Source of the DNA: Iphione sp. A-MEVVRFRX5
Taxonomy: Eukaryota
Assembly (NCBI GenBank): GCA_976226885.1
Contig: OZ320314.1
Span: 72,354,001-72,418,000 of the forward strand
Direction: 5' to 3'
DNA length: 64,000 nucleotides
The first letter of the stretch is position 1; each line of letters opens with the position of its first letter. Under the pieces are notes generated by a model. That model did no database searches. It was not told the origin of the DNA and saw only the letters and a program-made list of their open reading frames with translations. Below are positions 270 to 51,437 of the stretch, piece after piece. The position numbers and the translations under genes were made by a program.

Positions 270-399
270 ATGGATTCTTCACTCTTGAAAGATAGAGAGC
301 GCTTTAAACAGAGGGCGCTCGCCAACCCGTCAGTAGAAGCACGGAAACCACGACCAGATGAAGGCAAACCCGCCAAAAGACCAAGACCCACGCCAAAAC
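270..399 (+). CDS. GTF2E2: GTF2E2 coding exon 1 ([23 protein letters not shown]...)
   Basis: Acceptor ttttccag at 266 precedes the ATG at 270, implying an upstream non-coding exon. Donor gtaagt at 400, phase 1. Confidence 0.92.
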
Positions 400-3300
400 G
401 TAAGTACAGATGTCAAGTCAGATACATGTACAGTGCTCCCTCGCTATTGCAGCATGGCAGATTATGCTTGCATAGCGCGGTGTTGGAATACTGAACCATT
501 TTTATATCAGAATTATTCATTTGGTGCCAAGGTATTATACTGGCAAATATTAAGACGTTACTGTAACGGTGTGTGAATATCAGTGGCCCTAGGAGGTCAG
601 TTTGCAATTGTGGTAGACGACGGCTAGACTCCCTTAACCCTGCAGTGCTACCGAGTTGTGCAGGTCAGTTTGCGAAACGAAGCTTTTCCAAACAATGTAT
701 CCAGTTGTCTCGCAAGAAATCGATGCTTATCCCTTCGCCTGACTCGGAGATATTCATGAACCCTGGTTATGTCACGTAATGTCTTTGTTGATCGTGAATT
801 TTGTAGTCTCGCTTGATTTTTTTAAAGGATAAATTTACCTTAATGAAGCAGACGTGGATGAATTTAATGGAAAATACATCCATACAGGCGTGCAGTGCTG
901 TAGAATATATGTAAACCATCACTAGAACAAGGGAAAAATTATACAAGGGTATAAAGATCTCAAGCACAAGGCTCAAACCTTGGGCGTTAGAATAGGATGA
1001 ACAGCTTCATGACTTGTTCAAACCTGTGATAATAAATGATCTGTTCTATACAGCAGCCCCGTCAGTTTCCCAGTTGAGTTACAAGAGCCTACCAGGTAGT
1101 TCGCAGTTCAAGTTCGGAATTTTGGCCAAGATCGTCAAGTACATGAAGGTAAAAACAGTCTTAAATACTAGCTCCCAGCTGAAGAAACTTAAAAACTGCA
1201 ACTGTTTCCACCGTAACGAACATTACGTGGTCGATAATTGGAGTGTGGCGCATGTTTCATGTTTTTCTTTGTCGCTTGTAAATCTTCATTCCGTTTAGGT
1301 TTAATCCCCTTCTTTAACCGGAAGTGATTTTCTTCAGGAACTGTTCTCATTAGTTTCCAGATATACATGTTTTTTTTTTATTATCGGTTATCAATAAATA
1401 TTATTCGTTCACCCGTGTACCAGTGCTTTGCTGACACGAAACCTTCTGTCATGGCATCAGTCCGATCCTCCTCCTCCAGCTTGATCCCTCTGATCAAGCT
1501 GCCTGAGTAAGGTGTAAGGCTCCTTGTGCCGAAGGTCATCGGTTCATGTCCCAGTGCAGTCTTTCACAAAATGCGTCCGTGACAATTCTAGTCATCATCT
1601 AAACTGCGCATGTGTTCTGCTGACATGGACAGGTCAAACATCAAGAGGGCGATACATACCCGCTGACGATTGATGAGATTCTGGATGAGACCAACCAGCT
1701 GGACATCGGCTCGCGGTTACGGCACTGGTTGTCCACAGAGGTAAGCTTCGTATGCAAGAGCATTGTATAATTTTTCACGTTTTCGTCGGCACATTAATAT
1801 CATCCCAATAAACCGCCAGGGACTTGTACGAATACAACGTACAGACCTACAGTCTCGCCAGGGCTGCTGGATGCATTGTGAGCTCAAACTCATAGTTGGT
1901 TGGGGTTTCAGGCGCTGATAAGTAACCCCAAGATCGAGGTAGTCGAGGGCAACAAGTTCAAGTTCAAGCCCAACTACAACATCAAGGACCGGCGGGCATT
2001 GCTGCGACTACTTGACAAGCACGACCAGCGGGGACAGGGAGGCATCTTGTTGGAAGATGTCGAGGAAGCCTTACCCCGCTGTGATAAAGCCTTGAAGGTA
2101 CCTTGAATCGTGTGTTGAATCGCAATGAGTGATGTTTGTCTATTTCAGTGATCAGTGAGAAGGACAGGTAAGTGTCTTCTTAGGAAATGCATGCCAACTT
2201 CCACGAGCTCACCAAGCCTTGAACGTTGGTATATATTTATATTGGATGGCAAGAAGTGTTGTCATCAGCTCTGGTGTATATGTGTATACGTGCGTGAATG
2301 CGCGTGCTTGCCCGGGTGTTTTGATGAGCAGTGAAGGGAGACATCTTGTGACAAGATGTCGAGGAGGTCACGAATCCGTAATGGTTTGCCACGTCTATAC
2401 CGTAATGGTGAATTCGTGTGTATTGAAACATAAGGGATGTTGTTTATATGTGAATTTGTGTGCGTTTGTTTTTTTTTAACATATTGGAATGATATACATG
2501 CACATGTATGTACATGTATTTAGCGGCATCCAACAAAGAACATTAACTCTTTAAAAAATACCTAACGGCTTCATGAAGAATCGCGACTATATCCTGTCAG
2601 GCACGATCTAAGTTATTAATATTTATAAAAGTTCCTTTTATGTCCGCAGGTTTCGTTTTTTCTATTAAGAAGCATACATAATCACTTTATATCAGTCTAG
2701 TATTGGCCATAACCATTACGATTTTGCATACACGACTATGGATTATATTCGTGATGTAATATTCGATAAGAAGTGTTACGGAAGAACCTGAAGGTTGGAA
2801 CCATATTAGCCAGTTGAGCTTACGCCTATGCACAAAACTCCATTGCGTCTTTTTTTGCAGCAACTTGGTGATGCCATAATCTACGTAACGCGACCACAGG
2901 ACAAAAAGAAAGTTCTCTTCTACAACGACAAAAGCTACCAGTTTACAGTTGACGAAGGTAAATGCCCTCTGTACTTTAGTAAACGTGACACCAGCAAAAA
3001 AGGTTCCCCGTTTCGTTAAACATGGATATGTATATTATTGTACATAGCTTAAGTTTCTATTACAACTGTCAGAGGACGTTTTAGTGCATCGAAATTTTAT
3101 CCAAGCTGCGGAATGTAGGCGCTTCAGATACGCCCTCTTTAGGAAAATGCTGAGACCTAGCGGTGTGTTCAGCTACCGCTTACAGTCGCCTTGAAAGTTC
3201 CGATATTCTTCCGAGGGAATAACGGAACTGTATGGACTAAATGATGTTATATTTTCATGCAAGGTCACATTTTTGTCTTAACTTGACGCTACTTAGAAAC

Positions 3301-6300
3301 TATTTTTTGCTTAACACTCACAGAGCTGGTGAAGTTGTGGAGGGGCGTTGCGGTGGACGGAATCGATGAAAACAAAATCGAGGACCACTTGGAGAAGCAG
3401 GGCATCACATCTATGCAGGATGTCGGGCCCCGAAAGGTAAGCTTCCTAGCCACGAATGGGACCGTCCTTTAGACTCCGACATTTTTTTCGACGATGAAAA
3501 GATGGCATATTTTAATGTCAGAAAAGGGAGTGCATACAACCGCTTTTTATATATGCACTAATGGTTTACCAGTGTTTTGAGCTCTGGTGTTTCCATTCTA
3601 GCAGTAGACGTATATCTGTACATGTATAGACCATATAAATGTACATGTATTTGCAAGCATATTTATATCGACTTAACCATACAGACAAGAGGCATCATTT
3701 TAAACTGACATAAAAGGGAACAAATGCATAGATATGAAAATAAGGATTCATTAATGATGACACTTTTTAATGAATACAAATATGCAGACAAAAAACATCA
3801 AGTATGAAGTAAATTTTAGCACTTAAAAGGACAAGCTCTAAGATGGATAACCGTAGACTCATTTTTCAAGCAATGGGAACGTTTCGTTATTATGTCTATT
3901 GAAAGTAGATTTTAGTTAACACAAAAACCACCAGAAGGTGCAAATGTGCTCCTGTCAGAACGTCTGGGAACTAGTTGGGTCTCAAATGTAGACAGTTAGG
4001 GAAAGAGTCAGAAATGCTCCCATTTAAGACGTTCACGTTCGCATATTTTACATACATGTATCTGTATATATACATATATGTACACAGTCGGACGTCTGTG
4101 TACATGCACTTAACTCAGAAAGAACGGATTGAATCGTGCATAGATAGATATGTAACCAGCAACGAAAAAAGGGACACCCAAGGCATATGGGTTAAAATGT
4201 CAAATAAACATTATAAATTCATATAAAAGTAATTTTGCGTAATGTGATGAGATATGTAAAGGAGATAATTCACATAATACATAAATAAGGTTACCATATC
4301 AAAAGAATTTAAGGGTCTTTTTAAATACATTAATACTGGGAAAAAATCCAACTGGAAATTAAATCCATTTTAAAATATCTTTTTTAGAACTATTTCTATA
4401 CAGTACTTTTCAAGATGAATTTGTATCCATCCTTTTGAGTAAGTATTTATATAACAACTTTTGGCTGGCATATCTCAGGATCTAGCAGGATCATCTGCAT
4501 TATTTTGCCCAAAATGATGCCTAAAATGTTCTTTGATTTCCTTGATTTTACACTGATGCACCCTTTTTGCCTGCTTGGTCAAATATATCCATTCAATATG
4601 ACATATATTATAGGGCAATGCAACAACAAACAACCCACCAAAGCAGTCATATTTCAATTTCGTCAGTAATCACTTTAAACAAAGTAATCTACAACATGCA
4701 TTTTCTTAAATACATATAGTTGTTTTTTAGACAGTGTTAATGTGTTGAATAAGAAGATTTGTTTGTCAGCTTAACATTCATAGTAGGACCATAAATTCTT
4801 AGTCTGACCTAGTTTGGTAAGAAATAAAAGAAAAACATGATATAGGATATAGAAAGTGAATTAAATTTCGTAAGTAGGGAGCTGTTAACCAGAGAGTATA
4901 CAATAACTGTAGTAAAGCTTTAGTCAAGTGGATGAAAAAATGTATATATAGTGTATGCCCAATTTCGCCTGTAAGTTGGTCGACGAAAAAGAACACATAG
5001 AATATAATATACGTATAATAGATGAGTGCAAGTTGTCTGAAAGGAGCCCAGTTCATTCAGCCGAGTTTTGAGGAGCCAGGAGAGGGAGCTGCCTTTCTTA
5101 TTACGTACCGTAAGTGAATACCTTGGATAATGGACCCTTCCTGCTTGAAACGGTTCTCACGACGCGAATTAAAAATACGAAAGGTACTGGACAGGTTTCG
5201 GTGGAATACTTTACTGGTCGAATCTTCATGCAGTCGGACGAAAACATATGTAACGTGTGTATGACGGAGTAATAACGGTTGGCAGGGCACCACACAGGAA
5301 TTTAGCGCGCTGTAGTACGTCCCTACGGCAATGCAACACCTTGTGAATCTTTTATCTGCCCTAAACCAAAGTATTCTACAGTATTAGAAATGTATGTACC
5401 CATGTTCCATCAAGATATCTTTACACCCAATTTGTGCGTATAAGACCACCGCTAGCCGTGAACCTAGGAATGCTGCTGTCTGACCCTCTGGTCATGCACC
5501 CACCCATGCAGAACTGGTAGCTCTTATCGTTTTTCAAACCAAATAAATTGTAGCCTAGAAACTTGCACATTCCCCGTCTGGTGTGGTCACCTGTCGAGTC
5601 TATTTGATAGTCATTTTTTTCATTTTCGTACGTTATAACTGAGTGAGGCACGGTATACCCTCGCATCCACAGGGCTGCTTGTTATCTGTGTGCGTGTGTA
5701 ATAGGAATAGCGCCATAAGTCAGAATAGGGAGAATCTTCATTTGAATAGAATGCGGAATCATTTGATGATGAGCAGTAGAACTCTATATATCCATGGTAA
5801 TGGACATGTGAACCCCCTTTTGCATCTGGTTGCATTCAAGGCTTCATATCCATGCTTCGGTATTTCTCCTACTTTTAGAGAATACACACGGAACGGCTCA
5901 GAACAGTCTGCACAAGGCCAAACAGACATTGCTAGTTCTGTCTTATCGTAAACCATTTATGATCCGTTCTATAAGTAATTCATAGGCCGGGTGTCCATGT
6001 GCGCATGTTGGCATGTAGCATGTAAGCTTTTCAATGTGTTTGGGGGGGATAATGTTAATAGGAGTATGTCCATTTAAGCATACGTGTCTGTGTGTGTAGC
6101 ATGTCCACATGCTCTGTGTTTATAAAATGGGAACTGTCCCATTTTTCTGTGAAGGTCAGGTGTGTTTGGGGCATGTTTTTTTGAAACACTCATTGTTACA
6201 GACATGTAAACATGTAAATGCAGTGAATACAGTGAATACACATGCCACAGTGTGTATACAACAATCATTGGATTAATAGAAACACCATTACCTGTTCTTA

Positions 6301-9300
6301 CATGCATGCCCCATGCCTACATGTGCACATGGACATCCAGCCATAAAGGATTTTCATAAGTCTGGAACATGTGGTATATAGATGTACATGTATTTTGCTT
6401 TCTATGGAAATGAACTGTAGAAAGCCACCTTATGGACACGTCTGCAATAGGGACATGCCTCTAATAGGGATACCTTGAGGGAGAGCATATATTCTGTATA
6501 CTAATAATTATTGAAGTCTCTACCAGGGATATGGAACAGTTAGGAGGAACCAGGAGTATCTGTATATGTATAATGTGTGTGCGTGAACATTGTATTTTCC
6601 AAGGATATTGTGTGCCTAGCAAAATGAACAGTGTCCATGATACTATGCATCACAGAAAGGAGAGGAAACCTTGTAGTGATGTGGGTGGTGAGGACAGTCT
6701 GAAGCAAGGAGAGAGAAAGAAAGGAAAAAGTTGGGTCTAAAGATGCCTAACTTCATCAAAATTCGGCGAAATTTGTTGGGTTTCCTCAATGATGCCTAAT
6801 TTCAGTGAAATTTGGTAAAATTTGTAGGGTGTTGTAAAGATGCGTAAATTCAGTCTGGTGAAAGCAGTAATGAAGAGAAAGAAAGAGTCAGACAGAGAGA
6901 GTATGTCTGTGTGCATCGATAGTCTGGTAGTATCAGCATCAGGCTGTTCCGGAAATGAGCTGTATACAGTTATTTGCTGTTTTCTTTGCAATATCTACCT
7001 CCACCCTTCTAAAAAAAATGTCTCGTTGTCGAAATCTAGTATAGAACCCCACTGGCGAATATACATTCATCGTTAAGTTTGTTGTCGGTCAGACTCAAAA
7101 TGGTGTCGCATTTACACAATTGTGCTGAACCTCCCGCATTATAGATTATGCCACTTTTTCTGTTGTACTGAGGACCTCAGGATTCCTCAGTGTCTAAATA
7201 AAATGCATGCATATGTATTTTCAATTCTGTTGCTGATAGTTGGGAGGAGATTTAGCTCCGTCGTTTCCCTCATTTTTTGTTGAGCGATATTAGTTTTTAC
7301 ATTTATTGCCCAATCTTATCAGTATGAACTACTGGATAGAGGCATATGAAACAGCATGCATTCTTGTAATACAAACGTGTACGTGTGGAGACTCGCGCAT
7401 ACACACACACGCACGCACTCACGCACGCACACACACACACACACACACTCACACACACTCTCTCTCTTACACCCTCGCACGCACGCGTACATGTACTTGG
7501 TTGACCTGGTCCTCACCAGACTGTGGCGCCGCCACAAAGTCCGTGTACAGGAGGCACCGAATTATGTGCTTTTAATGGACTCCTTTAGCTTTTAACTGAG
7601 TGTGTTATATGTTAGTAAATAATGTACAGGCGGCTGAGTAAACCGGGCGTTCTCAGCACATCGAATACAGTAGTAATACGCCCACTGCTGTAAGGCCTGG
7701 GCATTGCCACAGGATCCCGGCTTGTTCTGCACACTATGCGCCCGCCGCACAATTTTCCTGGAGATCTGCACAAGGGCATTGCGGTGCGTGTCAAGGTGAA
7801 TGTGCCGGGCGCACTGGATGGGCGCCTTGAAATCTCTAACCCAAGGTAACCTTGTCAGGTGAGCTGTGGACGGGTAGTTTTCTGGTGAAGAAGAAGCGGC
7901 CACGCCGCACGCGCCCCAACACCCTCCCTCCCAGCCTCCCTCCCAGGGGACCTTCACCGCCCAGTCACCACCTGACTCCTCCCACAGCACGGTCGACTTT
8001 GATCTTCTCGTCTCCTCGTGCCGCTTCTATCATCATTGATTCCTTTTGTTGTCAAAACAAGACCCGCAGTGAGCGAATGGCTGAGCCGCTGACAGGGGAG
8101 GCAATTTCAGGCCCACGCAGGCTGACAACTGACAGGTAGCGGAGCCGCTGCCTCAGAAGAAGCATTGCGGGCGCCGGTTTGGTAATATAACGGACGACGC
8201 CCGGGTGGGGCGGGGGTCGCCAGGAAGATCGCGCTGGGTGCTGTGAGCACAGGTAGAATGGTCTTTGAGAGAATCGATAACCATTCGCTGGTAGTCGGAT
8301 GATAAGCCGACCACACCCTTCTGGTGCGCTAAGGCAGATTATAAACAAGCTCCAGCCTGCCTCTTAGTAACCTTTCTGTTCTGCGCCGCCCCCCCCCCCG
8401 CCCCGTCCCCACCATGGTCTCCTACTGTTGCCTCTTCTGACATTGTCTGCCTGTGTTTTGTCGTTTTGGCCTGCCGGTTTGTTTGTCGATTTACCTTGAC
8501 TATCTCTGTGTCCTGCAGGAGGCAGGACCTTCATATCATCCGTCTCTGTCTCTCTATCAACATGTATTTACCTTAAGTCATCTACTGTGCTCAGTCTCCT
8601 CTCCCCCCTCCCTACCTCCCCCTTTTCCCGATGTCCCCCTTCTCTTTCCTCCTCCTCCTTCTACTCTCTCTCCTTCTTTGTCACTGTCCCCGTCCCACTC
8701 TCTGTAGGATTAGTTATTGTCCTCCACCTCATAGAATCGGGGGGGGGGGCTTCGGAGGAATACTGCTGTCTGACTGTCCGACCTTCCATCATACTCTGGT
8801 GTGTCATATAACTCTAAAACCATTCAGTTAAATGAAATGATTTTGATATATGATATTTATGTATATGGACCCATGGCACTGGTAATTGTCGTAGTAATTC
8901 AAGTATTCATTAGAGAGACATTATGTCATTTTACTCTTTTGCTTACATACCCACAAACATATGTACCTTATTTTTGGATTTCTAGATCTGATAATGCACT
9001 AACACATACAGACACACTCACTAATACCCTTTCTGCCAGTACCACCTTGTAACAGTCTGACCAATGGAGGTGCAAACAAGCATGAAATTCATGGAGTGGG
9101 AATGATATCACAGTGGCTGATAAGCCTGGTACCCTGACCTATATACAGGGCAGGGTGCCAGGTGTGGAGGTGAAAGACAGTGGACTTCTCTCTTTGAGCT
9201 ATTGTACTGTTTAGTCCCATAATAATTATTTGGCAATGTTTTCAATGCTTGTTCTGACATTATCATGAGCACACATATAGATCTACCTTTAAATGAAGTG

Positions 9301-9803
9301 CCTATGTCAAATATATCATTAATTTGTTTTCTCCAGGCCTTAGAGTTCACATTAGAATATGCACAAACTCCCTGATTATCACCCACTCTTCACCTCTCTA
9401 GTATTTTTGCTAAAATAAAACAGTTATGCAAGGATTTAAATTGATACTCTAATGTGATGATTTAGATTCAGTTTTAATCTATGTTTTTTCAACCATAGAA
9501 CCATATGATGCCATTTAAATCTTTAAAACATCAGCTCTGACAGTTGCTTGTTTACATGGAACTCACTGCAAGTGTCCGGATTGCCCACTCAAAGAATGGC
9601 CACTTGACGATGGGGAATAACAGACTTTGCAGGTCCACACTCGTTTAAACGAGGACTGATCTGCTATGCATGCATTCCCCCTCCTCATTCTATCTCCATG
9701 CATTCCATCACCTCAGTCTGCCATAATCCTTCACTTACTGGCCCTTTTCCCCTAATCCTTCTGCCCATATCTGCCTGTCTGTCTGTCTGTCTGTCTGTCT
9801 GTC

Positions 9804-9852
<49 letters not shown>

Positions 9853-10865
9853 CTCTCTCTCCGTCTCTCTTTCACTCTCTCCCTCCCTCCATATCAGAAG
9901 ACTGGGCCAGAACTCCACACGGTTCCAAATTGACCTCCCACCTATCAACCAATCCTTACCCTTTAAGGAGCATAATGTTGCTACTGGCAAAAGGTCTTAG
10001 GTCATTACTTGCGGAAACATTTAATCTGGTGTTTTGGCCACTGTATCTATAACAACTGCCATTTCCCTTCGCCCGACACGTTAGAACTGGGGACTACCGG
10101 TGCCTTTCTCTGCAGTATGACAGTATAAAGGTAACAGTAGAGAGAGAGAAAAAAACAGTTTAAAAGTATTGGTTTAATGAAGGCTTTGTCCTCGTGCCTC
10201 GACGTGTGCAGTGTGACGTCACGCTCCCTTTAGCTCTTTTCTCTGCCGTTGCATCTTCCTTTTTTTGATGTTTGCGACACGTGAATCCTAAACACATGGT
10301 ATAGGTGCACACTTGGAGAAAACGGGGCTTCGATTCCGTGGACAGCGAGCCAAACGCATTAATTCCTGAAGACGCGCTCGGGCCGACATGCAATCGTTTG
10401 AGTAATATCTTAAGACCCAGATGTATGTGATAGGACAAGACTGTGTATACTGTTATGTGTGTTGAACAGGCGAATAGCTGACCGACGAGACCTAGAATCG
10501 TACGAAATTAGTTTCGTTGTGAGCCATTATTTATGCCGTGACAAAATGTCATCATAAGGACTTTTAATGTCATGAGTTATGGGTGTGAAGTGAAGCGTTA
10601 GTAACTTAGAATCTCACAAGTCCCGCCGTTTTATACAACACCGCCGCCGTTCTCATTGCCTTCTCCCAATGCACACATTACACATCATAGTCACTGCCAT
10701 CGGAACTGCGGATTACCCGTTGCTGATCTAACTTTTTTCTATAAATTTCCCTTCCAGGCTGTCAATCCGAAGCGCAAGAAGACGAAGGCCAAGAAACGTC
10801 AGTTCAAATCGCATAACGAGCACATGGGGGATATCCTTCAAGATTATTCCGACATGCAGAAATAG
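270..10865 (+). CDS. GTF2E2: General transcription factor IIE subunit 2 (TFIIE beta), 7 coding exons, 278 aa
   Basis: Hand-spliced exons 270-399, 1054-1148, 1633-1740, 1912-2097, 2861-2957, 3324-3436, 10758-10865. All introns are GT-AG with consistent phases (837 nt total). The protein contains the TFIIE-beta motifs [93 protein letters not shown] and [12 protein letters not shown]. Confidence 0.97.
1054..1148 (+). CDS. GTF2E2: GTF2E2 coding exon 2
   Basis: [24 protein letters not shown]; CAGCAG acceptor at 1051-1056; donor gtaaaa at 1149. Confidence 0.92.
1633..1740 (+). CDS. GTF2E2: GTF2E2 coding exon 3
   Basis: [36 protein letters not shown]; acag acceptor, gtaagc donor. Not in the ORF track. 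Confidence 0.93.
1912..2097 (+). CDS. GTF2E2: GTF2E2 coding exon 4
   Basis: [22 protein letters not shown]...[12 protein letters not shown]; tttcag acceptor, gtacct donor. Confidence 0.95.
2861..2957 (+). CDS. GTF2E2: GTF2E2 coding exon 5
   Basis: [32 protein letters not shown]; ttttttgcag acceptor, gtaaat donor. Confidence 0.95.
3324..3436 (+). CDS. GTF2E2: GTF2E2 coding exon 6
   Basis: (E)[37 protein letters not shown]; cacag acceptor, gtaagc donor. Not in the ORF track. Confidence 0.94.
7395..7490. repeat. Compound (CA)n/(CACG)n/(CT)n microsatellite
   Basis: Visible cacacacac/cacgcacg runs; these produce the spurious HTHTHT and CVCVCV ORFs. Confidence 0.9.
9085..9530 (-). repeat. Dispersed repeat, copy A (about 440 bp), family unidentified
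   Basis: The reverse complement aligns by eye with 19685-20125, e.g. gataatcagggagtt..gcatattctaatgtgaactctaaggcctggagaaaacaaa and taccaggcttatcagccactgtga..tcattcccact. Confidence 0.8.
9768..9890. repeat. (CTGT)n followed by (CT)n microsatellite
   Basis: Directly visible; explains the ERERER and SLSLSL ORFs. Confidence 0.95.
10758..10865 (+). CDS. GTF2E2: GTF2E2 last coding exon
   Basis: [35 protein letters not shown], which matches the conserved C-terminus; cccttccag acceptor, phase 0. Confidence 0.93.
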   Translation, partial: AVNPKRKKTKAKKRQFKSHNEHMGDILQDYSDMQK

Positions 10866-21533: not shown

Positions 21534-21802
21534 AACGCACATTCTATCTTTGAGAGAAGTTATTGGCTTAAATTTAAGTATTTTTCCATGCTTTTGGGGG
21601 GAAGAGTTAAGAATGAATGTTAATATGTATTTATTTATGATTTTTTAGCTAATTCGTTTAATTTTGATGGGGTCAGGGAGCAGAGAAAATTACATTTTAT
21701 CCCAACGGGACGTATGTCGTCTGCTAGCCGACAACAACGCATCGCGGGTTACCGCTCTGTTTTGACGCTACGTAAGAAAATCACTTTTTCATCAATTTGA
21801 CC

Positions 21803-24900: not shown

Positions 24901-24905
24901 ACTCA

Positions 24906-36900: not shown

Positions 36901-37503
36901 AAGAGATAAAACAGTAGGTTTAGTTTCTGGCGTTTGGGGCAGGAAGTAGCGCTAGTCTACATTTGTTTGGAGCAGTCTACTATGCCAATCAACTAAAGTG
37001 TTAAATGGTCATTCACCTGACAAGGTGGGAGAGCAAATGTTATTTGATCTCATACCTTCCTATGTGAGGTAAAGGTGGAATATGGCACATAAAGGAAGCG
37101 CGGGTAGTTAGCATTGTACAAGTAGTTGAGTATATTTGAACATACGCTTGTATTCATATATATGTGAAGAGCAGCAAAGTTTGCAAGATCGGAAACCAAA
37201 CGCATCTTTCACTCGCATATATAATGATAATTTTGTTCTTAAAGCAGTGTATGCTTTCATTAGCAATTCTAAAGGAACGCAGGCCAGGAGGATGCCTTCC
37301 TGGCCTGTGATCTGAGTCACGTCACCCCGAATGGCATGGCATTTGCTGATCTATCACCGACAACTGCTCCCGAGAGGCAAACTGATGAAGGTACCATTAA
37401 ACCCTTAGGGCAGTCTGACCTAGGCTAGACCCAAGGGGCTCACACACTGTTGTAATATGCTAGTTTTTTTCATTTTCCACATGTAACGTCTGTCTACGTC
37501 TCC

Positions 37504-37563
<60 letters not shown>

Positions 37564-40500: not shown

Positions 40501-43500
40501 TGACTTGGCTGACTAATAAAATTTTATTACTATTCCGCCAATGTTGATCTATATATGGACTGCCGGCCTTGACCTAGCAACCGACCAAACACACCATCAG
40601 AAAGCCTCGAATATTCCTCACAGAACCGTATTAGTCACCGGTAACGTTAGAAAAACCTCTTACCGTCGAAAATGAATATTTGACATGGCCACATGTTCAT
40701 GTAGTATTGTGTTAACTATCGTGACAAGAAAAAAAAGATAGAAAATGATCTATATTTGTATAATGCACTTTGGAAGAAGCAACATGCTGGACCAGGGAGT
40801 AACAAAAAACTATTGCATCTAATTTTAAGAGACCAGGCACTTGAATTGCTGTAGCTAGGGAAATTGTCAATTTGCGTGTCGTGCCAAAGGTGTTTTAACT
40901 CGCTTTTCTAAAGCGGTGTAGAGGTGGACGTGGCCTGTGTTGGGGTGGACGTGGCAATAGAGGATGGCATGGCTAAAGGTGGTGTGTTATGGACGGAACC
41001 TTCGGCTGCAGAGGCGGCACAGGACTGGGCACGGGCGATGCGGCGGCGGCTGCGGCGACGGCGGCTGCTGCTGCAGTGGGCATGGGGGAAGGGGAGAGTT
41101 GTGCAGGGGTGTACTTACGTCCAGTGATCGGGTGTACAAGTGTCGGGTGAGTGGCGGCGGGCTGTGGGGACTGCTGCTTCGGCTTCGTCACCTTTGTGTT
41201 GCTCTTAGCAAACTCTAGCCGCAGCGTCTGTGGCAGGTCCGGGTCGAACCGCACGCCCTGCTGGGGGAAACCACCTGTCAGTCATCGGCTCGTCGTCGTG
41301 AGACACGTGCGCGTGCACGGATCAAACAGGTCATCAAGCAGCTAAAGGCAAACATTCTGGACTTGGGCGCAGGGTCCGCCCAGCGTTTGAGTGACCCCGT
41401 GCAAGTCCACCGAGCGAGATTTCCCTTCGCTATTGGCCCGGAAAGACACCATTAACACAGCCCAACCCAGCAATACCCAAGCCTTCTGTTCGTAAGAAGT
41501 CCAAATAGAGATCCAAAATATGTTGTTTTCTATAGAAATGACAAGGGCAAGCTTGCCACTAGCTACTAAGCCATGCATACCGTTTTAAATTCATACTGAG
41601 AACATAATGCATTCAGAGATGATTGACTAATGCCGGGGATGCAATCAAATGAGGTCAGTGATGAGAGGCTGTTAGGTAAGGTCTCCGCTTTGGAAGCGGG
41701 AGAGCGCTGGGTTGAGGTTCCCTATGTTTAAGGAAGGTTTCCCAGGTCAGTCCTTTAGTGAGCTTACAGAAAAGTGCTTTACTTATCGCAATTTGTATTG
41801 ACAGGGTGTCAAGGCACCACGAGGTGAGGGGACGATGACGGAGAGGAGACAGGCAAGGGATTTGCTGGGACTTGGTGCCGTGGACGTCACCAGAAGCTAA
41901 TTAAGGCAGCTGCTGCCCTCCCGGCCCACCCATCGTCCCCCCTATGGAATGGCCCAACTCACCTGAAGGTCTTGCTTGGCAGCCTCCGCGGCACATCTCG
42001 AGCTGAACGTCACAAAGCCTACGGGCTGCAAGAAGCAGAGGGCAACACGTGATCACCACAGGGTCGGCACCCATAATGAAGCAACCATGTCAGTCTCAGC
42101 CTGCCATGGCAGTCCTTACTAAGGACCCGTAGGCATATTTCTGAACACTCTGCTGCTACCCCAAACCCCTACCAACCTCTTACGGCGTTTAGGTGACCTA
42201 TAGTGTGCGTGTTATGAATCGGTTGCTTCACTATGGATGAACATAATAAGTTTGCTCTTCTTACCAGACAGGACCAACATGGTAAAACAGTTCTCCTTCC
42301 TTTAACCTTGCAAATGACGCGTTGTTTATTGTTGTTGATGTCGTTTGATTCATGATGGTGTTTAAATGTAATGAGAGGCAGAGTATTTGTTTAAAAGAAG
42401 AGTAAAAATCAAATATTGTCTTTATTTTTTTGGATGTAGACAGTTTTTTTTTTGAAATTTCAAAACAAAAACTCAGAAATGTGCCCAAGCTATGTCTAGC
42501 TTGAATAGAAAAAAACGCTGAGCAACAGCAGTTAGTCAAAACTAAATTTTAAAAGGACCTTTCACCAAAGCTGAGTTAAAACGATGATTTAATGCGAAGG
42601 AGTAGCATTAGTGGGGTTATGCACCACCGACTAACTTCCCAGAAGATATGTAATGATTTTCAAAATGACTGATGCGGCAAACGTGAGTTCCAGACAAAAG
42701 GAAACGATTCTTCATCAAATGATTAATTATTCGAAAAGTCGATGAAAATGAGAGATGTTGTTTGAAAGGAAAAGAACCAAGTGAAATTTTGAAGAACAAT
42801 TGATGATTAGCCACAGAAACAGTATCCCCATGTTGCGGGAAATTTCATCGACCGATGAAAGGAACGTAAAGAAGTCAAAATTTATCCTGTGTATGGACGG
42901 ATATCATGCAACTGTATTGACAGTCTTCCAGCTGTTGTAGTGAGGCATTTCATTCTCATGTCATGCACCCTTGACCCAAGCAACAAACTGACCTCAACCT
43001 CTATAGAAATTACTGCAATACGATTCCATACTTATTTAAGAAAATTGAACATCTTAGTGTACTTGTCTTAGAAAGATTTTGTCTCGTGAACAGCGCCTAG
43101 AACCTATCAGAAGAAACACGTCGGGCATTCAGACGCTTGCTGATGGGGTGTTGATGTCTTTGGCTGATGGCTTAATCGGCGTTAAGGTCAGTTTGTATGG
43201 TAGACGCCCGTCTTGGCTCGCTCCCGTACCAGTGGTGGCTGTAGCATGCGCCAGGGAGGACGAGCTGACCTGAGATCGGCCTTGGCTGAACCTTGGCACG
43301 ACCTTACAGCCACGGGCGCAGATTATTGCTGGATAGGTATGGTGAATTGGACGCTTGGATGGCAGCTGAATATTGGGGGTAGTTTACATGGAAAGCAAGA
43401 GATAAGGAGTAAAGAAAGAAAAAAATGTTCTCATGGAGCTGGACGGAAATAAGTCGGTGGTGATTAGCATTGGATGATGGTGAATGTGGCTGTCAATGGC

Positions 43501-46500
43501 TTTTTGTTTTTACCTTATGCGAAGTGTTGAAACCAGTGACCCAGTTGTTCTATACAATTTGGGTTTCGCCTACTCACACACACCCTAAAAAATCACCTTC
43601 ATCTAAACCCAGCAGCGTCGGCAGCAGCCGTATGTAAAGGTGATATAGACCATTATCAGCCGTGAACTTGTTATTTTGTACGCCAAGGTCGCCTGAAGGT
43701 CATCTAAGATGGCCTTATGACCTTATGGTAGTGCATATTCATTGTGTCTGTGTGAAACGTAGTGCCGTTGGGATACCTTGGGTGAGGCTCCCGCAAAACT
43801 GAAGCAAACTGAATGGGATATTCTGTGACGACACGTTTGTGACTGTTACGTAAAGTTCATGGGCATTCTCGCAAGGGTCATGAAAATGGCAAGAAAAATA
43901 CGTACATTTCGGATTTTGGGGGGCATTTCCTGAAAACAACAGCCAATGTGGTCAGTATCATACAATATGTGGTATACCTGGGCTTGCTTATCGGGATATG
44001 TCCGGCCTCCAGGGTTCACTATGGCAAGCGGCGCCATCGTGCTAAAGAAACATCAATGAGTCAATACCTGCTACAACAATATGAAACAGGAGTGGAATAC
44101 AAATATATAGACTTTTAGTTTCAAAGTATTTAATCGCCTCTAAACGTGATCGGTTGCACTGTGACATCTGGTGAAAATTTGCTGCTTTATTTAAATACGT
44201 TGCAGTTCTACATTACGTTCAGTGAATGTGAAAAATACAGATATGCGTTCTTAACTGCATGTCTAATTTGGATAAAAGAAATGTTTACAGCGAAAATAAT
44301 ATCTATTGAAATTTTACAACACAAGATACATTGCTTTGCGTTGGTGTAGAGATGTAAAAGACCTAGGATTTACACTAAATAAAAAGTTATTGTAGATTTC
44401 GTGCGACTTATACTGTAAATGTAAGATCAGAAACTGCATGACCTGTTAGAATGTAAAAACAGTGTCCGTCTATGGTATAACGTGTGGAAGGCGATTCAAA
44501 ACGGCTGTAAAACAAATTTGCCGCATAGATAATGTAAGCTAGGTGTGAATCGGTTGGTTGGCCTGCCACTCCCTGAGGGCTGATGAAGTAGGCGTGGTCA
44601 GTGAGGAGAGTGACAGGTAAACCATGTGTGTGGGGTTGCCGGGTGTGAGGGGGATATAACTGGCCGGATAGCTGGATGCTTGTCTTTAGTTGTGTGCCTC
44701 GATAATAAGTGTGAAGTGTATTGGCCGCCTACGAAGGTGACTCATGTCCACACGCGTGGTCATAGAGATGTCATATAAGGTGGGTGAAAGAGCCGACAAG
44801 GCCTGGCAATATGGCGAGTGATTCGAATCAGGGTGCCTGTGAGAGTGAAACCCAAGCACAGTCTAGGGCTGGTAAATTGTAATAATTGTTAGTGAACTGT
44901 CCTCTACAAGATACCAAACAACATCACCATTCATTGTAAACCACTCCCCATCCGGGTTGTACGACGGTAGGAGCTTAACCGAAAACAATATCATTGAATA
45001 TTATTTGTGATTAGTGACTCCTTTCTGGTGACCAACGCACAAAAGTCCTATTTCAACAGTGTTTTAAATCTTATAGTGAAAATTCAAAACGTCTCTTCAT
45101 ATTTGAATTCAATTAATCCACTTCATATTAAAATTATTTTTTGGCAAGAAAAAAGAGGTATGCTGTTGTGGTCGGGGTTGCCTTACGTAAATTAATATAA
45201 AATCGCCAGACTTTCCAATCAGACTCTGGGAGGGGGATCCCGTTTTCATAGCCTATCCGAATGACTGATTTAATTACGGCTTTCATAATCAATAATTTCC
45301 TGCAGAACAGAGCTGGATAGCATTAAACTTTCACGAGGGTCGCCTTGACCTTGTTGCCAGCACGCCGGTGCCGCATGAGAAGAGCGGACAGAAAACACCA
45401 CCCATTCCATCCCACCTTTTAAAGCAGTTTGCCCGTGGCAAAGCCTTGCAAAATCAAATGTTTAATACTCTTCGACGGCCGTTAAAAAATCCTAATTACT
45501 GACGTGCTGAGTTTAACTTATTTTTCAAGCATTCCCCCAAACGGGACTTGCCAACGTCAGAAAGGGCTTTTGGAAAATAAAGAAAAAATCCGGCTGTCGA
45601 TTACCAAAAAAAGGATTGAAGCTATGACTATCAGTAGATTGACTGACCCCAAAATTTCTTGTGTTGGTCACCAGAGGGAGTACGTGAACCATGCAGGTGA
45701 AGGGATACTTACTGAGGTGCTTTTGCCATTTTTGCCAGTGACTTTCAAGAGTGATCCTTCATAGCCCTGCAAATAGTGAGCAGAGAGCGGCAACAGTGCA
45801 GTGCACTCTCAATCATTGGTCCACTCTACTTACATTGGTATTTTTTCCCTGCTTTCCCATCACTTTTAACAAGGAATTTTCATACCCCTAAAAACGGAAG
45901 CAAAACATTTTCAGCAAGGTAATAACATGGTAATGGGTCATGAACACATTTGGTTGTGATCATAGGACATGCAACTGTGAACAACTATGTAGCAACACGG
46001 TTAAATGTGAAAATTATTTTCGGTAAAAATGTCTACCATTCATGCTTTGTACAACAAAAGGTGATCTAACAAACAAGCCACACTGTGTTAATTTTTCTTT
46101 GTTAGGATATATTGTGAAGAATTTGATATCATTGGAAGGGTCGTTATAATAGAAACAGTACACTTTTTGTATATGTTCACAGTTTTATGTTGTCCATGCG
46201 GTCCCTGGGTAGGTGGCCGTGAGGCCCATTTCAATTTTCATGGTGGTTTGAATTTGTGGCTTTTTAAAGTGTGCTGGACCGACCAGATCTTTAAAGAAGG
46301 AAGTGTAAAAGTGTGACTTAATTCATTCAAATTTTGGCTTAATCGAAGAAAAAGGTGAACATTCTGAAAGTATTAAAGGAGTATCGTTTTGATGCTACAG
46401 GAACAAATTAGGGTAATTTCAGCCACTCTGTCTGAATATATTTGCCCTTCAGGTATTCTGCCCTTTCATTGGAATCTCTCTCCGAGAGTTTTCTGCAATA

Positions 46501-49500
46501 ATGTGTGAAAAAGCAAGAGTTACAGATGCCAGCAGTGTCCACCAGCAATGGTAGCAATGGCATCGTAGTTGATTGATCAAATGTTATCGGTCTAGACAGG
46601 GAAAGAATGCCAACAGAGGACATGGGACGGAGTGGGCAGATGAAAAGATATCAAGTACAGAGTGGAAGTAGCGAGCCAGAGAGAACCGGAAAAGTCGACT
46701 ATTCGCGATAGGAATTTGGAAAAGGCAGCCCAGAAAACGGGAAAATTGGAAGGTAGAGAAAGAAAGGGAATGACGGGAGGGAAGTAGAAAGGACGGGAGG
46801 GGGGTGGAAAGGAGTGTGGAGAGAATACGCAACGGAAGGGCAGGTTTGTAGACTAAACGGAAGGCTGGAAACTGCCAGCTTACCCAGGCACACAGCTTGG
46901 CCCATCTATTACCATGTTGTCGCCGGGAGGGCCACATCGACACCACTAAATCATGATTAGCCGTGGTACATGTCCTCGCCCCGTGCTGATTGACTTTCAA
47001 AGACGACAGGTAAGACTGCCTGCCATCAAATCAGCTTAGCTCTACCTGTTCTCGTACAGTTGCTGTCTGCTGTAGTCCCTATAGTCCTCTGTTAAATACG
47101 TGGGGAACACATCAACGCCGTGTGTACATGAGCAGCTCTAATCAAGTGAACACGCGCTAACTTATGTCATGTCATGGCAGAAAGTTCCTCTTTATCTTCA
47201 TTCGCTCGCAGCGGCTTACGAACAAAACATGACAAATGCTGTGCCCAAATGTCACATAATCTTCACAGACGATATCCTCTTAGGCTAGTCGCCAACTGCC
47301 ATTTCCTATCCTATTTATTTCTATTTGGGATACTTTTTTGTATGAAAAGTCAAGAAGATGTGTTAGGCTTAATTAAAAGGACTTAAATCTTATCTGTTCG
47401 CTCCATGAAGACAGTTATTTTGAACAGAATTTTGTTATTACAAGAGAGGCATTCCAATCTTCCCCGCCACGTGCTACTCTACAACCTGGCTTCAGTCTTT
47501 GTTTTTGGTTGCTGTCATTTTCTCAGACGGCATTTTCGTTGCTGTGCAAGCCGATCGGGGTTGATAGCCTTGTGAGACGCCCTGGATTGCAGCATGAGCG
47601 TTGCCGGAGATATGTGGGCAAGTGGCATCGGTGGGCGAGCAATCCTGGACCGGAAAGATCTCATGTCGTATATGTGTACACACTAGGAGGTACACTGGAG
47701 ATGCTGCTCGACCTAACAGCTACAGTGGAATGTAGATGTTTGGCGCTGTTCGGCCGACAAGGACAGAACCCCGGAAATAAGGGCATCGACTTTGAGCCTA
47801 GCTGCCGCTTACAGCAAAGCCCTGGGCCTTGACAGCATGGGAAAGACACAGCATACACGGGCGTCTGTAACCGGCTCCTAATTTCAATATGAGATCTCCA
47901 TGAAGTAGGGAAGCCATCAATCACGTCCGGGAAGCCACGCCCTCGCTACAATGTGATCGCCACCAATCTTTGCCCGCCTTTAATCCGTCGTCGAAGCAGG
48001 CCGTCAAAATGCTATGAAATATTTCACACGGAAATTGCCGAGCTCCTTTAAACACAAATTTCTTTGAGTGATGGAGGATATGGATAGAGCCCGGCAACAC
48101 CGGCGATGTGGAAAGCTATAAATAATATAGCAAGCTTTTCAATGCTTCCGCTGACTTTCAACAGTCTAAATCCCAGCTTTACTCAACGTGGACAATAAAA
48201 GTGCGATAAATCATATCTAGTTGCGATGTTTATTGGTTACATTTACTGCCAACGTCGGTCACTTGTCGATATGACAAGCCGGTGGATGGGGACAGGCACC
48301 AAAACACTCTGACCTGCTGATTACTGACAATAATTTTGTCATGACCTCGTGTTTTAACCATGTTCATCTGGAAGGGGACCTTTGTGATATTGGTCGGTTG
48401 AGACTGTCAGTCCTTTAGCTGCCTCACCCCGACCTCTTCCCCCTCCTCCCCACGGACAGTGTGTGAGCCATTATTGACCACTGGGCCCGGCCCATTGACC
48501 GGGAAGGCACGCCCGGCACTGCAGCAGCCATCAATCTACAGGAGCACCAGGCCGACCTTATGTGGAGGCCGCTGCGGCAACAGACTGGCGAGCCGAGCGC
48601 GCAGCCTGGTCCAGAAGGCGCTTGTCATTAAATGGGGCCAATTTGAAAATGTCTTCTGTCAAACCTGACAATCATGCTCCAGTATACAAGTGGTTCCCGC
48701 TGTGGAGATGGTTAGCGCGCGGCTGATACGTGCCACAGTGCACAGATCCGACTCTGACCTGCTCAGTAGATGGTGCCAATGGCTTCCTCTAGTCTCATGG
48801 CTTCAAGCCGGGCGCACTTAAGTGAACGTGCAACTTCTAAGTTAGGCCGCTCCAGTGTAAAACGTATGTATCTTACAAAATGATTTTTTTTCAGTTATTG
48901 GTGTAATAGAGATCATAAAGCGTGAAGGCCTCTTATGGCATCTCATTTAAAGGCAGCCGACTCAGAGCGTGAATCACGTCTAAATAATTCCTGAAATTAT
49001 TTCTGCCTCATCATTTGTGAAAGAAGTGTTCCAGAGAAAACGAGAGGTCTCATTATTACAGAATGACATACACCGTGGATATATTACATCGATGAAGAGG
49101 CGAGCGAGCGAGACACGCAATAATTATTATATAAAGTATGCACTGTATGCAGTACATGTATATTGTATCGTCAAACTACAAGAAAACTATGAAGAAAGGA
49201 AAGGCATCGAGAAACAAAGTGCCAGGCGAGGAGAATCAGCGACGGAGCGAGCGTGTCGGCTTGAAACTGGAGCTTGTCGACCAGAACCGTGTCCCTCGTC
49301 ATCCAACTAGCTAGCAAGGACTGTTTGGCTCTGCGCCAGGTGGCCAGGCCTTGCGCTACCACTAGTTTGATGGAGGCTTCATTACCCGACCTTGGCACCA
49401 GGCGCCACGCTGATCTCACTGGAGGTGCCCACCTCCACCCTGAGTCCTCAGAGGGGGAGGGGTGCGTACGTGCCGCACATCGCTTTCTACTTTTAAACTT

Positions 49501-51437
49501 GAGCCTGACATTATTCACCAACATTTCGGCAGAGGGCTGAATCCAATTAACTGTCTTACGCATCTAATGACTGATATTTGCTAGACACCATTCGTGTTAC
49601 TTACAAAACGTTTTAGCATCCAAAACGTGTCACTGTCAAGCCCTTCTCTGTATGATCACATCAGGAACTTCCTTGTTCACACCACCAGGAAGGGCAAGTG
49701 GGGAGGGGGGAAGTTAATAATAGCATTACGAATACCTAGCCGCTGCCAGGGAACATGACTAATGCAGTCTTTTTCCAACCGATGCCTGAGGGTGAATCAG
49801 CGAAATGCTTTACTATCATGACAAGTAAAAGCGGGTAGTAATTAAAGCTGGTGTTCCAGTGATTTGTTTCCTCCAATACATATATCGTCACAATTTTTCA
49901 CTAATATCCTGGCCTATATCTAAAGAATGACTGGTAGATTATATCAAACAGTACGACTGAGCATGCATTGCTTGAACACGTATTTAAATTATTGCAGGAA
50001 CCCGCTAGATCCTGCATCTAGATAAGGATCTATCGAGAAAGAAATTGGGAGCTCCCCCCCAGCTTGTTGACAATATAAACATTTATCACGGCCAGTGCTA
50101 CCAAAGATCATATCCTATAATTATGAAAAGTATGCACTGTATATTTCATCGAGTACCGCCACACGCACTGGAAAGAGGTATATTAATAGCCATGTATGTT
50201 TACATGCCTCAGTGAATTCTGCGTAGAAAACGATGAGATGTATTCTCTTTGGGAAAAAACGCATCTGCAGACATGAGGATATCCCAATAGAAACACCATT
50301 TAATATCTGGACATGTGATTCGGCCTTCGATCAGTTCCAGAAGGCTCCAAGCCGCGATTCCCGCGCCCTCTGTCAGCCCACTGTCTGCCCTCTGCCGTAC
50401 GCAGCGGCAAGCTAATCCTCTGTTTTATTGCCCGCCGTATCTCGGCGGCGGTCGGACACAAATCGCTCGTCGAAATCTCCAGCTGTCCGAAGCCGGTTCG
50501 CACTCATAACTCCGCATCCCGCCTGATTTATAAAGACAATCAATCCGTCCGCTAATTCCCCGTAACGACAATTTATGCTTGCCGCCGCCATGTTTATTGA
50601 TGATGGTTTACGTGTAGAGGGCGTTGCGAGCGTTGATCTATGCTGCGTCCGTCCCATTTGACATCAACGTCATGATCAAATCCTCTCCGCTCCAGGTCCA
50701 TGCGAAGAAACACTATTGTGTTACAGGTGGAGGAATGGCTTTCTTTATAGCCCACTAATAGATTCCGCTAACCGAATATATTGTCTTTTCCGCTGCTCTT
50801 TCGGGATGTGTTGGATGTGCTCCCAGTCAATGCTTCCAGCAGTGATCTGATGACACTGTTACTATAATGTTCTCATTTGGCAATTTCCAGCAACATTCAC
50901 CGTAAGAGGACTTTGCTATTACCCTCTAAAAGGAAGACAGACCAACTGCGTAGAGAACCCTAGAACCAATCTGTTGAATGACAAGTTAGGCAACCTTATC
51001 TGTCGTCATATTTAAAAACAGTTTTAACAAGGAATAGTACACTGCTTATTATTTAAACAATTATTAAGAGCAACACATAATTCTGGGCACAACATAAACA
51101 TCAATTGTACATGTGAATTAGTTCGATGTGAAAGTGCTAAGCCCATAGCTGCTTAAACTGCTATTTCCTTAGTGAACGAAGTGGGTTGGTTGCCACTGTC
51201 ACACTGGTGGTGCACTCAAGCTTATGTAGGTAGTGAGCTCGAAGGCGCCATGTTACAGTGAAGAGTGATACTTTCATGTGACTTAATTTTGAGCGAATAT
51301 TGCCCATGGCCAAATTGGCTTTTGAGACACATTTAGGTAAAACAGGTTTTTGTTCCTACCTTATAGCCACGAAAGAGAAGGTAAAGCTCCCTTGGTTTCG
51401 CATCCATGGGGAGTCCGCTGACGAATAACGTCCGAAC
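33596..51437 (-). CDS. cpo: Couch potato/RBPMS/MEC-8-family RNA-binding protein with two RRMs; 8 coding exons in the window (350 aa), 5'-partial
   Basis: Exons 51437-51360, 45766-45713, 42025-41963, 41257-41119, 38944-38814, 35899-35694, 34377-34308, 33907-33596. All are GT-AG with consistent phases (1053 nt). RRM1: [35 protein letters not shown]...PVGFVTF...[32 protein letters not shown]2: [22 protein letters not shown]...[12 protein letters not shown]...[21 protein letters not shown]. Confidence 0.96.
34308..34377 (-). CDS. cpo: cpo exon (RRM2 middle)
   Basis: (S)[23 protein letters not shown]; ttccag acceptor, gtatgt donor. Confidence 0.93.
35694..35899 (-). CDS. cpo: cpo exon (linker plus start of RRM2)
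   Basis: [10 protein letters not shown]...[26 protein letters not shown]; ttttcacag acceptor, gtacta donor. Confidence 0.93.
37503..37562. repeat. (CT)n microsatellite, about 28 units, in a cpo intron
   Basis: Directly visible. Confidence 0.97.
38814..38944 (-). CDS. cpo: cpo exon (post-RRM1 region)
   Basis: (Q)[43 protein letters not shown], which resembles RBPMS PEVWAPYPLYPAEL...ALHAQ; ctaatttcag acceptor, gtatcg donor. Confidence 0.9.
41119..41257 (-). CDS. cpo: cpo exon (end of RRM1)
   Basis: [27 protein letters not shown]...HPITG; cagcag acceptor, gtaagt donor. Confidence 0.95.
41963..42025 (-). CDS. cpo: cpo exon (RNP1 of RRM1)
   Basis: [21 protein letters not shown]; ttcttgcag acceptor, gtgagt donor. 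Not in the ORF track. Confidence 0.95.
44533..44987 (+). mobile_element. Possible solo LTR (about 455 bp) in a cpo intron
   Basis: Starts TGTAAG and ends ACA, with near-duplicated flanks ATAA/ATAT. Internal TATA-like gatataac (about 44653) and a composition that differs from the AT-rich flanks. No partner LTR or internal domain is present. Confidence 0.35.
45713..45766 (-). CDS. cpo: cpo exon (RRM1)
   Basis: [18 protein letters not shown]; tttgcag acceptor, gtaagt donor. Not in the ORF track. Confidence 0.94.
51360..51437 (-). CDS. cpo: cpo exon (RNP2 of RRM1); most 5' coding exon found
   Basis: [26 protein letters not shown]; gctcgcag acceptor, gtagga donor. Not in the ORF track. Confidence 0.95.

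What the first reader, a model, noticed from the sequence alone, without database searches (positions are those of the whole stretch)
270..51437. GTF2E2 and cpo/RBPMS are convergent neighbours, as in human 8p12: candidate ancient microsynteny or genomic regulatory block
Seen in the sequence: GTF2E2 (+) and a cpo/RBPMS-family gene (-) are tail-to-tail, and no other convincing protein-coding host gene lies between them. Established: human RBPMS and GTF2E2 are adjacent and convergently transcribed on 8p12 (recalled, to be verified). Inference: the linkage may be very old and may be held in place by regulatory elements for the developmental RNA-binding gene lying in or near the housekeeping bystander gene.
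Basis: partly seen in the sequence, partly recalled or inferred. Interest (0 to 1): 0.7.

Follow-up and report, generated by a model that had tools for sequence, protein, structure and literature searches.

The report
GTF2E2 and cpo/RBPMS tail-to-tail neighbours
In this worm genome a housekeeping transcription-factor gene (GTF2E2) and an RNA-binding developmental gene (cpo/RBPMS) sit tail to tail, as they do in birds and humans; this is probably an old inherited neighbourhood, it is missing in most other animals I could sample, and nothing shows that shared enhancers hold it together.

Summary
An intact 7-exon TFIIE-beta gene lies on + (270-10865). Eight frame-consistent exons of a two-RRM cpo/RBPMS/MEC-8 orthologue lie on - (51437-33596). 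The two genes are convergent, and only transposon remnants and repeats lie between them.

The same tail-to-tail pair occurs in:
- the tubeworm Lamellibrachia satsuma;
- an unidentified metagenome contig (L036);
- a galliform bird;
- human, according to a paper.

I did not find it within the 10 kb I could inspect in Capitella, Lottia, Tubulanus, Tegillarca, Daphnia, Nematostella or Trichoplax.

Only two major lineages (vertebrates and annelids) are verified. Shared ancestry is likely, at about 0.75, but the published four-lineage criterion for ancient microsynteny is not met here.

The regulatory-block idea gets no support. GTF2E2 introns share no detectable sequence among the three worm loci, and the L036 gene is only 1.9 kb long.

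The single conserved non-coding block is the end of the roughly 4.5-kb cpo 3'UTR. In the two compact loci it sits 0.43-1.3 kb from the GTF2E2 stop codon. Abutting 3' ends, which leave a small target for breakpoints, are the more economical explanation.

The parts
270..10865 (+). GTF2E2 (TFIIE beta) coding region. Seven exons: 270-399, 1054-1148, 1633-1740, 1912-2097, 2861-2957, 3324-3436, 10758-10865. The last intron is 7.3 kb.
   Evidence: All exons have AG/GT borders and sum to 837 nt. Pfam PF02186 and PF18121 hit exons 3 and 4. Exon-wise tblastn matches orthologous loci.
33596..51437 (-). cpo/RBPMS/MEC-8-family gene, 3' part. RRM1 exons: 51437-51360, 45766-45713, 42025-41963, 41257-41119. 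Linker exon: 38944-38814. RRM2 exons: 35899-35694, 34377-34308, 33907-33596 (stop codon). The 5' coding exon lies outside the window.
   Evidence: Searches give the borders, phases and the 1053-nt sum. Searches give the PDB matches to RBPMS, RBPMS2 and MEC-8. Searches show the best named relatives are 'couch potato' proteins of molluscs, annelids, nemerteans and arthropods. Searches show the same exon pieces in eight other loci.
28807..33595 (-). Inferred cpo 3'UTR of about 4.7 kb. The only part conserved across species is its end, 28807-28931, which carries AATAAA on the - strand (TTTATT at 28841).
   Evidence: blastn matches to Lamellibrachia L002 26878-27010 (76% over 136 nt, E 2e-15) and to L036 3238-3296 (84%, E 6e-8), collinear in both. 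A 36-nt match lies 7.1 kb past the stop codon in Lottia. Poly(A) signals are. No RNA data are available, so the transcript end is inferred.
16425..17863 (+). pogo/Tigger-type transposase remnant in the intergenic region.
   Evidence: Pfam DDE_1 (E 7e-36) and HTH_Tnp_Tc5 (E 1e-14).
21797..23893 (+). piggyBac-type transposase in three open pieces.
   Evidence: DDE_Tnp_1_7 profile positions 2-87, 86-167 and 165-349, plus zf-Tnp_2.
24902..26887 (.). Repeat-rich filler: an inverted repeat with 148-nt arms (24902-25946) and a 43-nt minisatellite (26394-26887).

Best explanation
The window holds two ordinary, intact host genes: TFIIE-beta and the annelid orthologue of cpo/RBPMS/MEC-8. Their tail-to-tail adjacency is most likely inherited from the last common ancestor of protostomes and deuterostomes. 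It has survived in vertebrates and in some annelids, and has been lost or loosened in many other lineages.

The most economical reason for its survival is structural. In the compact versions of the locus, the long cpo 3'UTR ends within about 0.4-1.3 kb of the GTF2E2 stop codon. The two transcripts therefore abut or overlap, and almost no neutral DNA is left in which a rearrangement breakpoint could fall.

In the window's own species, transposons and repeats have since pushed the two ends about 18 kb apart. This shows that tightness is not required for function.

Shown: the gene models, the orientation, the adjacency in four further loci or species, and the conserved UTR-end block.
Inferred: common descent, the transcript ends, and the small-target argument.
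For: - Gene models.
- Lamellibrachia: cpo (+) 10001-23578, then TFIIE_beta (-) from 28273.
- L036: GTF2E2 (+) 922-2811 and cpo (-) 12382-7579. It is a separate species, with 70-86% DNA identity in exons to both the window and Lamellibrachia.
- Bird. Human: PMC4654475.
- The conserved cpo UTR end lies 430 nt from the GTF2E2 stop in L036 and 1.3 kb from it in Lamellibrachia. Facing poly(A) signals sit about 20-65 nt apart (3247 and 3266 in L036; 26968 and 27032 in L002).
- Chance expectation: with 8000 shared genes scrambled within 20 conserved linkage groups, about 41 shared adjacent pairs arise genome-wide, of which about 2.6 are convergent in both genomes. PMC3514665 reports several hundred true ancestral pairs.
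Against: - Only two major lineages are verified.
- Seven sampled animals lack the pair within the stretch I could see, including the annelid Capitella, where other genes follow cpo.
- The flank limit of 10 kb means that 'not adjacent' is not the same as 'unlinked'.
- No deuterostome invertebrate could be sampled.
- The window's own 18-kb gap shows the junction can be opened without loss of either gene.
- Transcript ends are inferred from signals, not from RNA data.
Confidence: 0.6

Rival explanations
1. Genomic regulatory block. Enhancers of cpo/RBPMS lie in or beyond GTF2E2, so any break between the genes would cut the developmental gene off from its regulators.
For: RBPMS-family genes are tissue-specific developmental regulators, and GTF2E2 is a housekeeping gene, which is the usual make-up of such blocks (PMC3514665). 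The pair is kept in two distant phyla.
Against: - blastn finds no non-exonic similarity in GTF2E2 introns between the window, L002 and L036. The same searches do detect the non-coding cpo UTR end.
- The whole L036 GTF2E2 gene is 1.9 kb, with introns of about 80-380 nt. That is the opposite of the long bystander introns expected.
- The window's 7.3-kb last intron is not matched in size elsewhere (1.5 kb in L002) and holds microsatellites.
- The genes meet at their 3' ends, far from the cpo promoter, which lies beyond the window.
Confidence: 0.08
2. Chance convergence. The two genes belong to the same ancestral linkage group and became neighbours independently in vertebrates and in an annelid lineage.
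For: - Scrambling gene order within conserved linkage groups yields about 41 shared neighbour pairs per genome comparison by chance.
- The pair is absent in 7 of the sampled animals, including the annelid Capitella.
- In Palaemon carinicauda both genes list the same 338-Mb chromosome, which fits a shared linkage group.
Against: Matching convergent orientation in both lineages is expected only about 2.6 times per genome comparison. True ancestral pairs are reported in the hundreds. The close 3'-3' spacing (stop-to-stop 4.8, 5.6 and 7.5 kb in L036, Lamellibrachia and the bird) is similar in both phyla.
Confidence: 0.2
3. Selected sense-antisense coupling. The overlapping 3' ends, or a shared two-way termination and polyadenylation region, give a functional link between the genes, such as antisense regulation or mutual termination. 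Selection keeps that link.
For: - The UTR-end block is the only conserved non-coding sequence. It carries poly(A) signals on both strands in L036, L002 and the window.
- It is recognisable even in the mollusc Lottia.
- Human transcripts of the two genes overlap (PMC4654475).
Against: - In the window the block is 18 kb from GTF2E2, which has its own AATAAA at 11520.
- In Lottia the block exists without a GTF2E2 last exon in the following 2.9 kb. The block therefore serves cpo on its own.
Confidence: 0.12

Closest known systems
Conserved ancestral microsyntenic pairs (CAMPs) of Irimia et al. 2012 (PMC3514665)
   Same: Two unrelated genes that are immediate neighbours in distant animal phyla, one a developmental regulator and one a housekeeping gene.
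   Different: CAMPs need linkage in at least four major lineages; here only vertebrates and annelids are verified. Most CAMPs are head-to-head, and 3'-3' pairs keep their orientation in only 15-25% of cases. I could not check whether this pair is in their lists, because the supplements are not held.
Ancient genomic regulatory blocks such as Islet-Scaper and Otx-Ehbp1 (PMC3514665, PMC7530604)
   Same: A tissue-specific regulator sits next to a broadly expressed bystander gene, conserved across phyla.
   Different: In those blocks the bystander has long introns with conserved non-coding elements that act as enhancers. Here the bystander's introns are short in the compact loci and show no conservation.
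Conserved convergent overlapping gene pairs (cis-natural antisense pairs). This rests on my own recollection of work on human-fish comparisons and was not checked here.
   Same: Tail-to-tail genes whose 3' ends abut or overlap and which stay linked over long times.
   Different: The overlap here is inferred from poly(A) signals only, and it has been broken by insertions in the window's own species.

Membership tests
TFIIE beta / GTF2E2 | TFIIE_beta core winged-helix domain and second winged helix (TFA2_Winged_2) | tested here: met
   PF02186 hits exon 3 (E 7e-4) and exon 4 (E 4e-6). PF18121 hits exon 4 (E 8e-6). Each score lies just under the whole-protein cut-off because the domains are split by introns.
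TFIIE beta / GTF2E2 | Collinear match to orthologues over the full length, including the C-terminal basic region and the NEH..L.DYS tail | tested here: met
   Exons 1-7 match orthologous loci exon by exon. The tail motif is seen in the window, L002 and L036. The exon sum is 837 nt.
RBPMS / couch potato / MEC-8 | The family's N-terminal RRM, the only domain conserved in all members (PMC5311487) | tested here: met
   Exon 1a matches MEC-8 5bjr (E 8e-12) and RBPMS 5det/5cyj (E 2e-9). Exon 1d matches RBPMS (E 8e-8). Other RRM families score E about 0.5 or worse.
RBPMS / couch potato / MEC-8 | Second C-terminal RRM, present in MEC-8 and in some isoforms (PMC5311487) | tested here: met
   Exons 2a-2c align to the second RRM of the Lottia, Lamellibrachia, Tubulanus, Capitella, Tegillarca and Daphnia genes. 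Pfam RRM_1 hits exon 2a (E 1.5e-3).
RBPMS / couch potato / MEC-8 | Homodimeric RRM that binds GCAC motifs | not testable with these tools
   This needs protein and RNA-binding assays. I made no fold because that would need the exons joined.
Conserved ancestral microsyntenic pair (PMC3514665) | [quoted passage not shown] | tested here: inconclusive
   Verified in vertebrates and annelids (window), plus one unidentified contig. Not seen within 10 kb in a mollusc gastropod, a bivalve, a nemertean, Capitella, Daphnia, Nematostella or Trichoplax. Longer-range linkage could not be examined.
Genomic regulatory block | [quoted passage not shown] | tested here: not met
   L036 GTF2E2 spans 1.9 kb for seven exons. 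L002 introns are 0.8-1.5 kb. Only the window has one long intron, of 7.3 kb.
Genomic regulatory block | Conserved non-coding elements in bystander introns | tested here: not met
   blastn of the window against L002 and L036 finds exon hits, one simple-repeat hit and the cpo UTR end. L002 covers only exons 4-7 of GTF2E2.
Genomic regulatory block | Enhancers in the bystander that contact the target promoter | not testable with these tools
   This needs chromatin-contact and reporter data.

The most novel reading that the evidence does not exclude
The conserved block at the end of the cpo 3'UTR may be a two-way polyadenylation and termination module used by both convergent genes. It would date back at least to the common ancestor of annelids and molluscs. 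Sharing this terminator, rather than sharing enhancers, would then have kept GTF2E2 and cpo/RBPMS together from worms to humans.
Probability: 0.12. Interest if true: 0.55.

Novelty: new member of a known kind. Interest (0 to 1): 0.3.

Why it matters
If the pair is ancestral, it adds one more convergent, non-paralogous gene pair to the several hundred ancient neighbour pairs already described.

It is also a useful counter-example. Conservation here can be explained by abutting 3' ends without any regulatory block. That warns against reading every regulator-plus-housekeeping neighbour pair as a block held by enhancers.

In practical terms, the pair is a small landmark for aligning annelid and vertebrate chromosomes. 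The conserved cpo UTR end is a candidate regulatory or termination element that can be tested directly.

Tried and rejected
- Literature. No paper in the library links RBPMS, GTF2E2 and synteny beyond a note on human piRNA loci. The supplements of PMC3514665 and PMC7530604 are not held, and neither main text names the genes. The supplements of PMC8851819 and PMC9023564 do not name the genes either.
- Three context look-ups were lost because the chosen isoform is not on record: gar GTF2E2 X2, Lingula cpo X2 and Owenia cpo.
- My full-length GTF2E2 word search was seeded with a representative that turned out to be a bird. It returned only vertebrates.
- The cluster look-ups named no amphioxus, echinoderm or hemichordate protein. 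Deuterostome invertebrates are therefore untested.
- The first metagenome scan failed because the alignment was too diverse. The second gave 60 loci, mostly contigs of about 1 kb; only L036 held both genes.
- A search for the UTR-end block after GTF2E2 in the other metagenome loci gave nothing significant.
- The upstream cpo exon was sought in 51.5-64 kb and not found.
- ORFs in the intergenic and upstream regions have no Pfam hit apart from transposases. Rfam finds nothing.
- No contig that I take for human was fetched.
Full report
**What is in the window**

The + strand carries an intact TFIIE-beta (GTF2E2) gene. It has seven coding exons with canonical AG/GT borders: 270-399, 1054-1148, 1633-1740, 1912-2097, 2861-2957, 3324-3436 and 10758-10865. 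They sum to 837 nt. Pfam TFIIE_beta and TFA2_Winged_2 hit exons 3 and 4. Each exon matches the orthologous exon in other animals.

The - strand carries eight exons of a two-RRM gene: 51437-51360, 45766-45713, 42025-41963, 41257-41119, 38944-38814, 35899-35694, 34377-34308 and 33907-33596. They sum to 1053 nt and have consistent phases.

Two separate exons of the first RRM find the RBPMS, RBPMS2 and MEC-8 RRM structures as best hits, with E between 8e-12 and 1e-7. The next family, Sxl, scores E about 0.5. The closest named proteins are 'couch potato' or RBPMS-like proteins with two RRMs from annelids, molluscs, nemerteans, a brachiopod and arthropods. PMC5311487 defines this family by the N-terminal RRM and notes a second RRM in MEC-8 and in some isoforms. 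Both gene identities therefore hold, and the genes are convergent.

The conserved upstream coding exon (motif SQSMDSVNT in orthologues) is not in the window, so the cpo gene runs off the right end.

All searches were made exon by exon.

**Between the genes**

Pfam hits in 10.9-33.6 kb are limited to two elements:
- a pogo/Tigger transposase at 16425-17863;
- a piggyBac transposase in three pieces at 21797-23893.

The rest holds a 43-nt minisatellite, an inverted repeat with 148-nt arms, and microsatellites. Rfam finds nothing. Long ORFs upstream of cpo have no domain hit. The caveat is that genes made only of short exons could escape this test.

**Which organism**

The best named match for the cpo exon is the tubeworm Lamellibrachia satsuma. 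Other notes of this scan treat the genome as an annelid. I did not verify that further.

**Synteny test**

I could see at most 10 kb on each side of an anchor gene.

Adjacent and convergent:

| Locus | Arrangement |
|---|---|
| Lamellibrachia satsuma (L002) | cpo (+) 10001-23578; TFIIE_beta (-) from 28273 |
| Unidentified metagenome contig JAAUXT010060176.1 (L036) | GTF2E2 (+) 922-2811; cpo (-) 12382-7579 |
| Galliform bird assembly (L006) | WRN (+); GTF2E2 (+) with an SMIM18-type gene in an intron; 194-aa RBPMS (-) starting 7.5 kb downstream, its exons matching my pieces 1a, 1c, 1d and the linker |
| Human | PMC4654475 describes overlapping GTF2E2 and RBPMS transcripts on opposite strands |

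L036 is a third species. Its exons are only 70-86% identical in DNA to both the window and Lamellibrachia. I fetched no human contig.

Not found within the visible stretch:

| Species | What follows the anchor |
|---|---|
| Lottia | No GTF2E2 in the flank |
| Tubulanus | No GTF2E2 in the flank |
| Capitella | A 396-aa gene and a Kelch gene follow cpo |
| Daphnia pulex | No GTF2E2 in the flank |
| Tegillarca | No GTF2E2 in the flank |
| Nematostella | GTF2E2 is intronless and is followed by a CAP-domain gene |
| Trichoplax | URB1-type and WD40 genes as neighbours |

In Palaemon carinicauda both genes list the same 338-Mb chromosome. That suggests shared large-scale linkage only. No amphioxus, echinoderm or hemichordate could be sampled.

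**Is the shared adjacency more than chance?**

I simulated 8000 shared genes scrambled within 20 conserved linkage groups. This gives about 41 shared neighbour pairs per genome comparison, of which about 2.6 are convergent in both genomes. Without conserved linkage groups the numbers are 1.9 and 0.1.

PMC3514665 reports about 600 ancestral pairs, with 448-492 retained in slowly evolving genomes. It requires four lineages to call a pair conserved.

A pair that is adjacent, convergent and similarly spaced in annelids and vertebrates is therefore more likely inherited than coincidental; I put this at about 0.75. However, the published four-lineage criterion is not met with what I could test, and Capitella and Lottia, both in that study's species set, do not show the pair nearby.

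**The regulatory-block inference**

PMC3514665 lists what such a block predicts: long bystander introns, conserved non-coding elements in them, and enhancers there.

- blastn of the window against L002 and L036 finds the exons, one simple-repeat hit, and a single genuine non-coding block. None of these lies in a conserved GTF2E2 intron.
- The L036 GTF2E2 gene spans only 1.9 kb, with introns of about 80-380 nt.
- The window's 7.3-kb last intron corresponds to 1.5 kb in Lamellibrachia.

These two predictions fail in the annelid-type loci. Enhancer contacts cannot be tested here.

**The one conserved non-coding block**

Window 28807-28931 matches L002 26878-27010 (E 2e-15) and L036 3238-3296 (E 6e-8). 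In all three loci it is collinear and lies in cpo sense orientation 4.3-4.7 kb past the cpo stop codon. It ends in AATAAA. A 36-nt core is also found 7.1 kb past the stop codon in Lottia. I read it as the end of a long cpo 3'UTR.

In L036 the block lies 430 nt from the GTF2E2 stop codon. The first + strand AATAAA after that stop (3266) falls inside the block, next to the - strand signal (3247). In Lamellibrachia the facing signals are at 26968 and 27032. In the compact loci the two transcripts would therefore abut or overlap, as reported for human. This step is inferred from signals, not from RNA.

In the window the block is 18 kb from GTF2E2, which has its own AATAAA at 11520. In Lottia no GTF2E2 last exon follows the block within 2.9 kb. 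The block therefore works for cpo alone, and the tight junction is not essential.

**Verdict**

Passive retention helped by abutting 3' ends is the best-supported mechanism. This is a new member of a known kind of feature, and it is of modest interest.

Noticed in passing
window 28807-28931 (-); L002 26878-27010; L036 3238-3296; L001 27951-27985: The end of the cpo 3'UTR, 4-7 kb past the stop codon, is a short AT-rich block that is conserved between annelid-type loci and recognisable in the mollusc Lottia. It carries poly(A) signals on both strands.
   Followed up: partly
L002 20917-22185: In Lamellibrachia, the intron after cpo exon 2b holds about 18 tandem copies, spaced about 64 nt apart, of a piece that repeats the last ten codons of that exon. 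It looks like a minisatellite seeded from the exon-intron border.
   Followed up: no
L003/L004 10001-10867: The Nematostella GTF2E2 gene is a single 867-nt exon, whereas the annelid, bird and Trichoplax genes have introns. It looks like a retrogene-type replacement, which by itself would erase any old neighbourhood.
   Followed up: no
window 21797-23893 (+): A piggyBac transposase in three open pieces that together cover the whole DDE_Tnp_1_7 profile plus the zinc finger.
   Followed up: partly
L070 14387-14602: In Tegillarca, two partial copies of the 3' half of cpo exon 1d (the [15 protein letters not shown] part) follow the exon in tandem.
   Followed up: no
L006 14836-15129 (-): In the bird, a 97-aa SMIM5/18/22-family gene sits inside the first GTF2E2 intron on the opposite strand, and WRN lies directly upstream. 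The window has no counterpart of the nested gene, and only 270 nt lie upstream of its GTF2E2.
   Followed up: no
window 52120-52143 (-): A short NTLFVSG match to the start of cpo exon 1a lies 700 nt upstream of that exon, in an open frame that soon stops. It is probably chance, or possibly a decayed exon copy.
   Followed up: no
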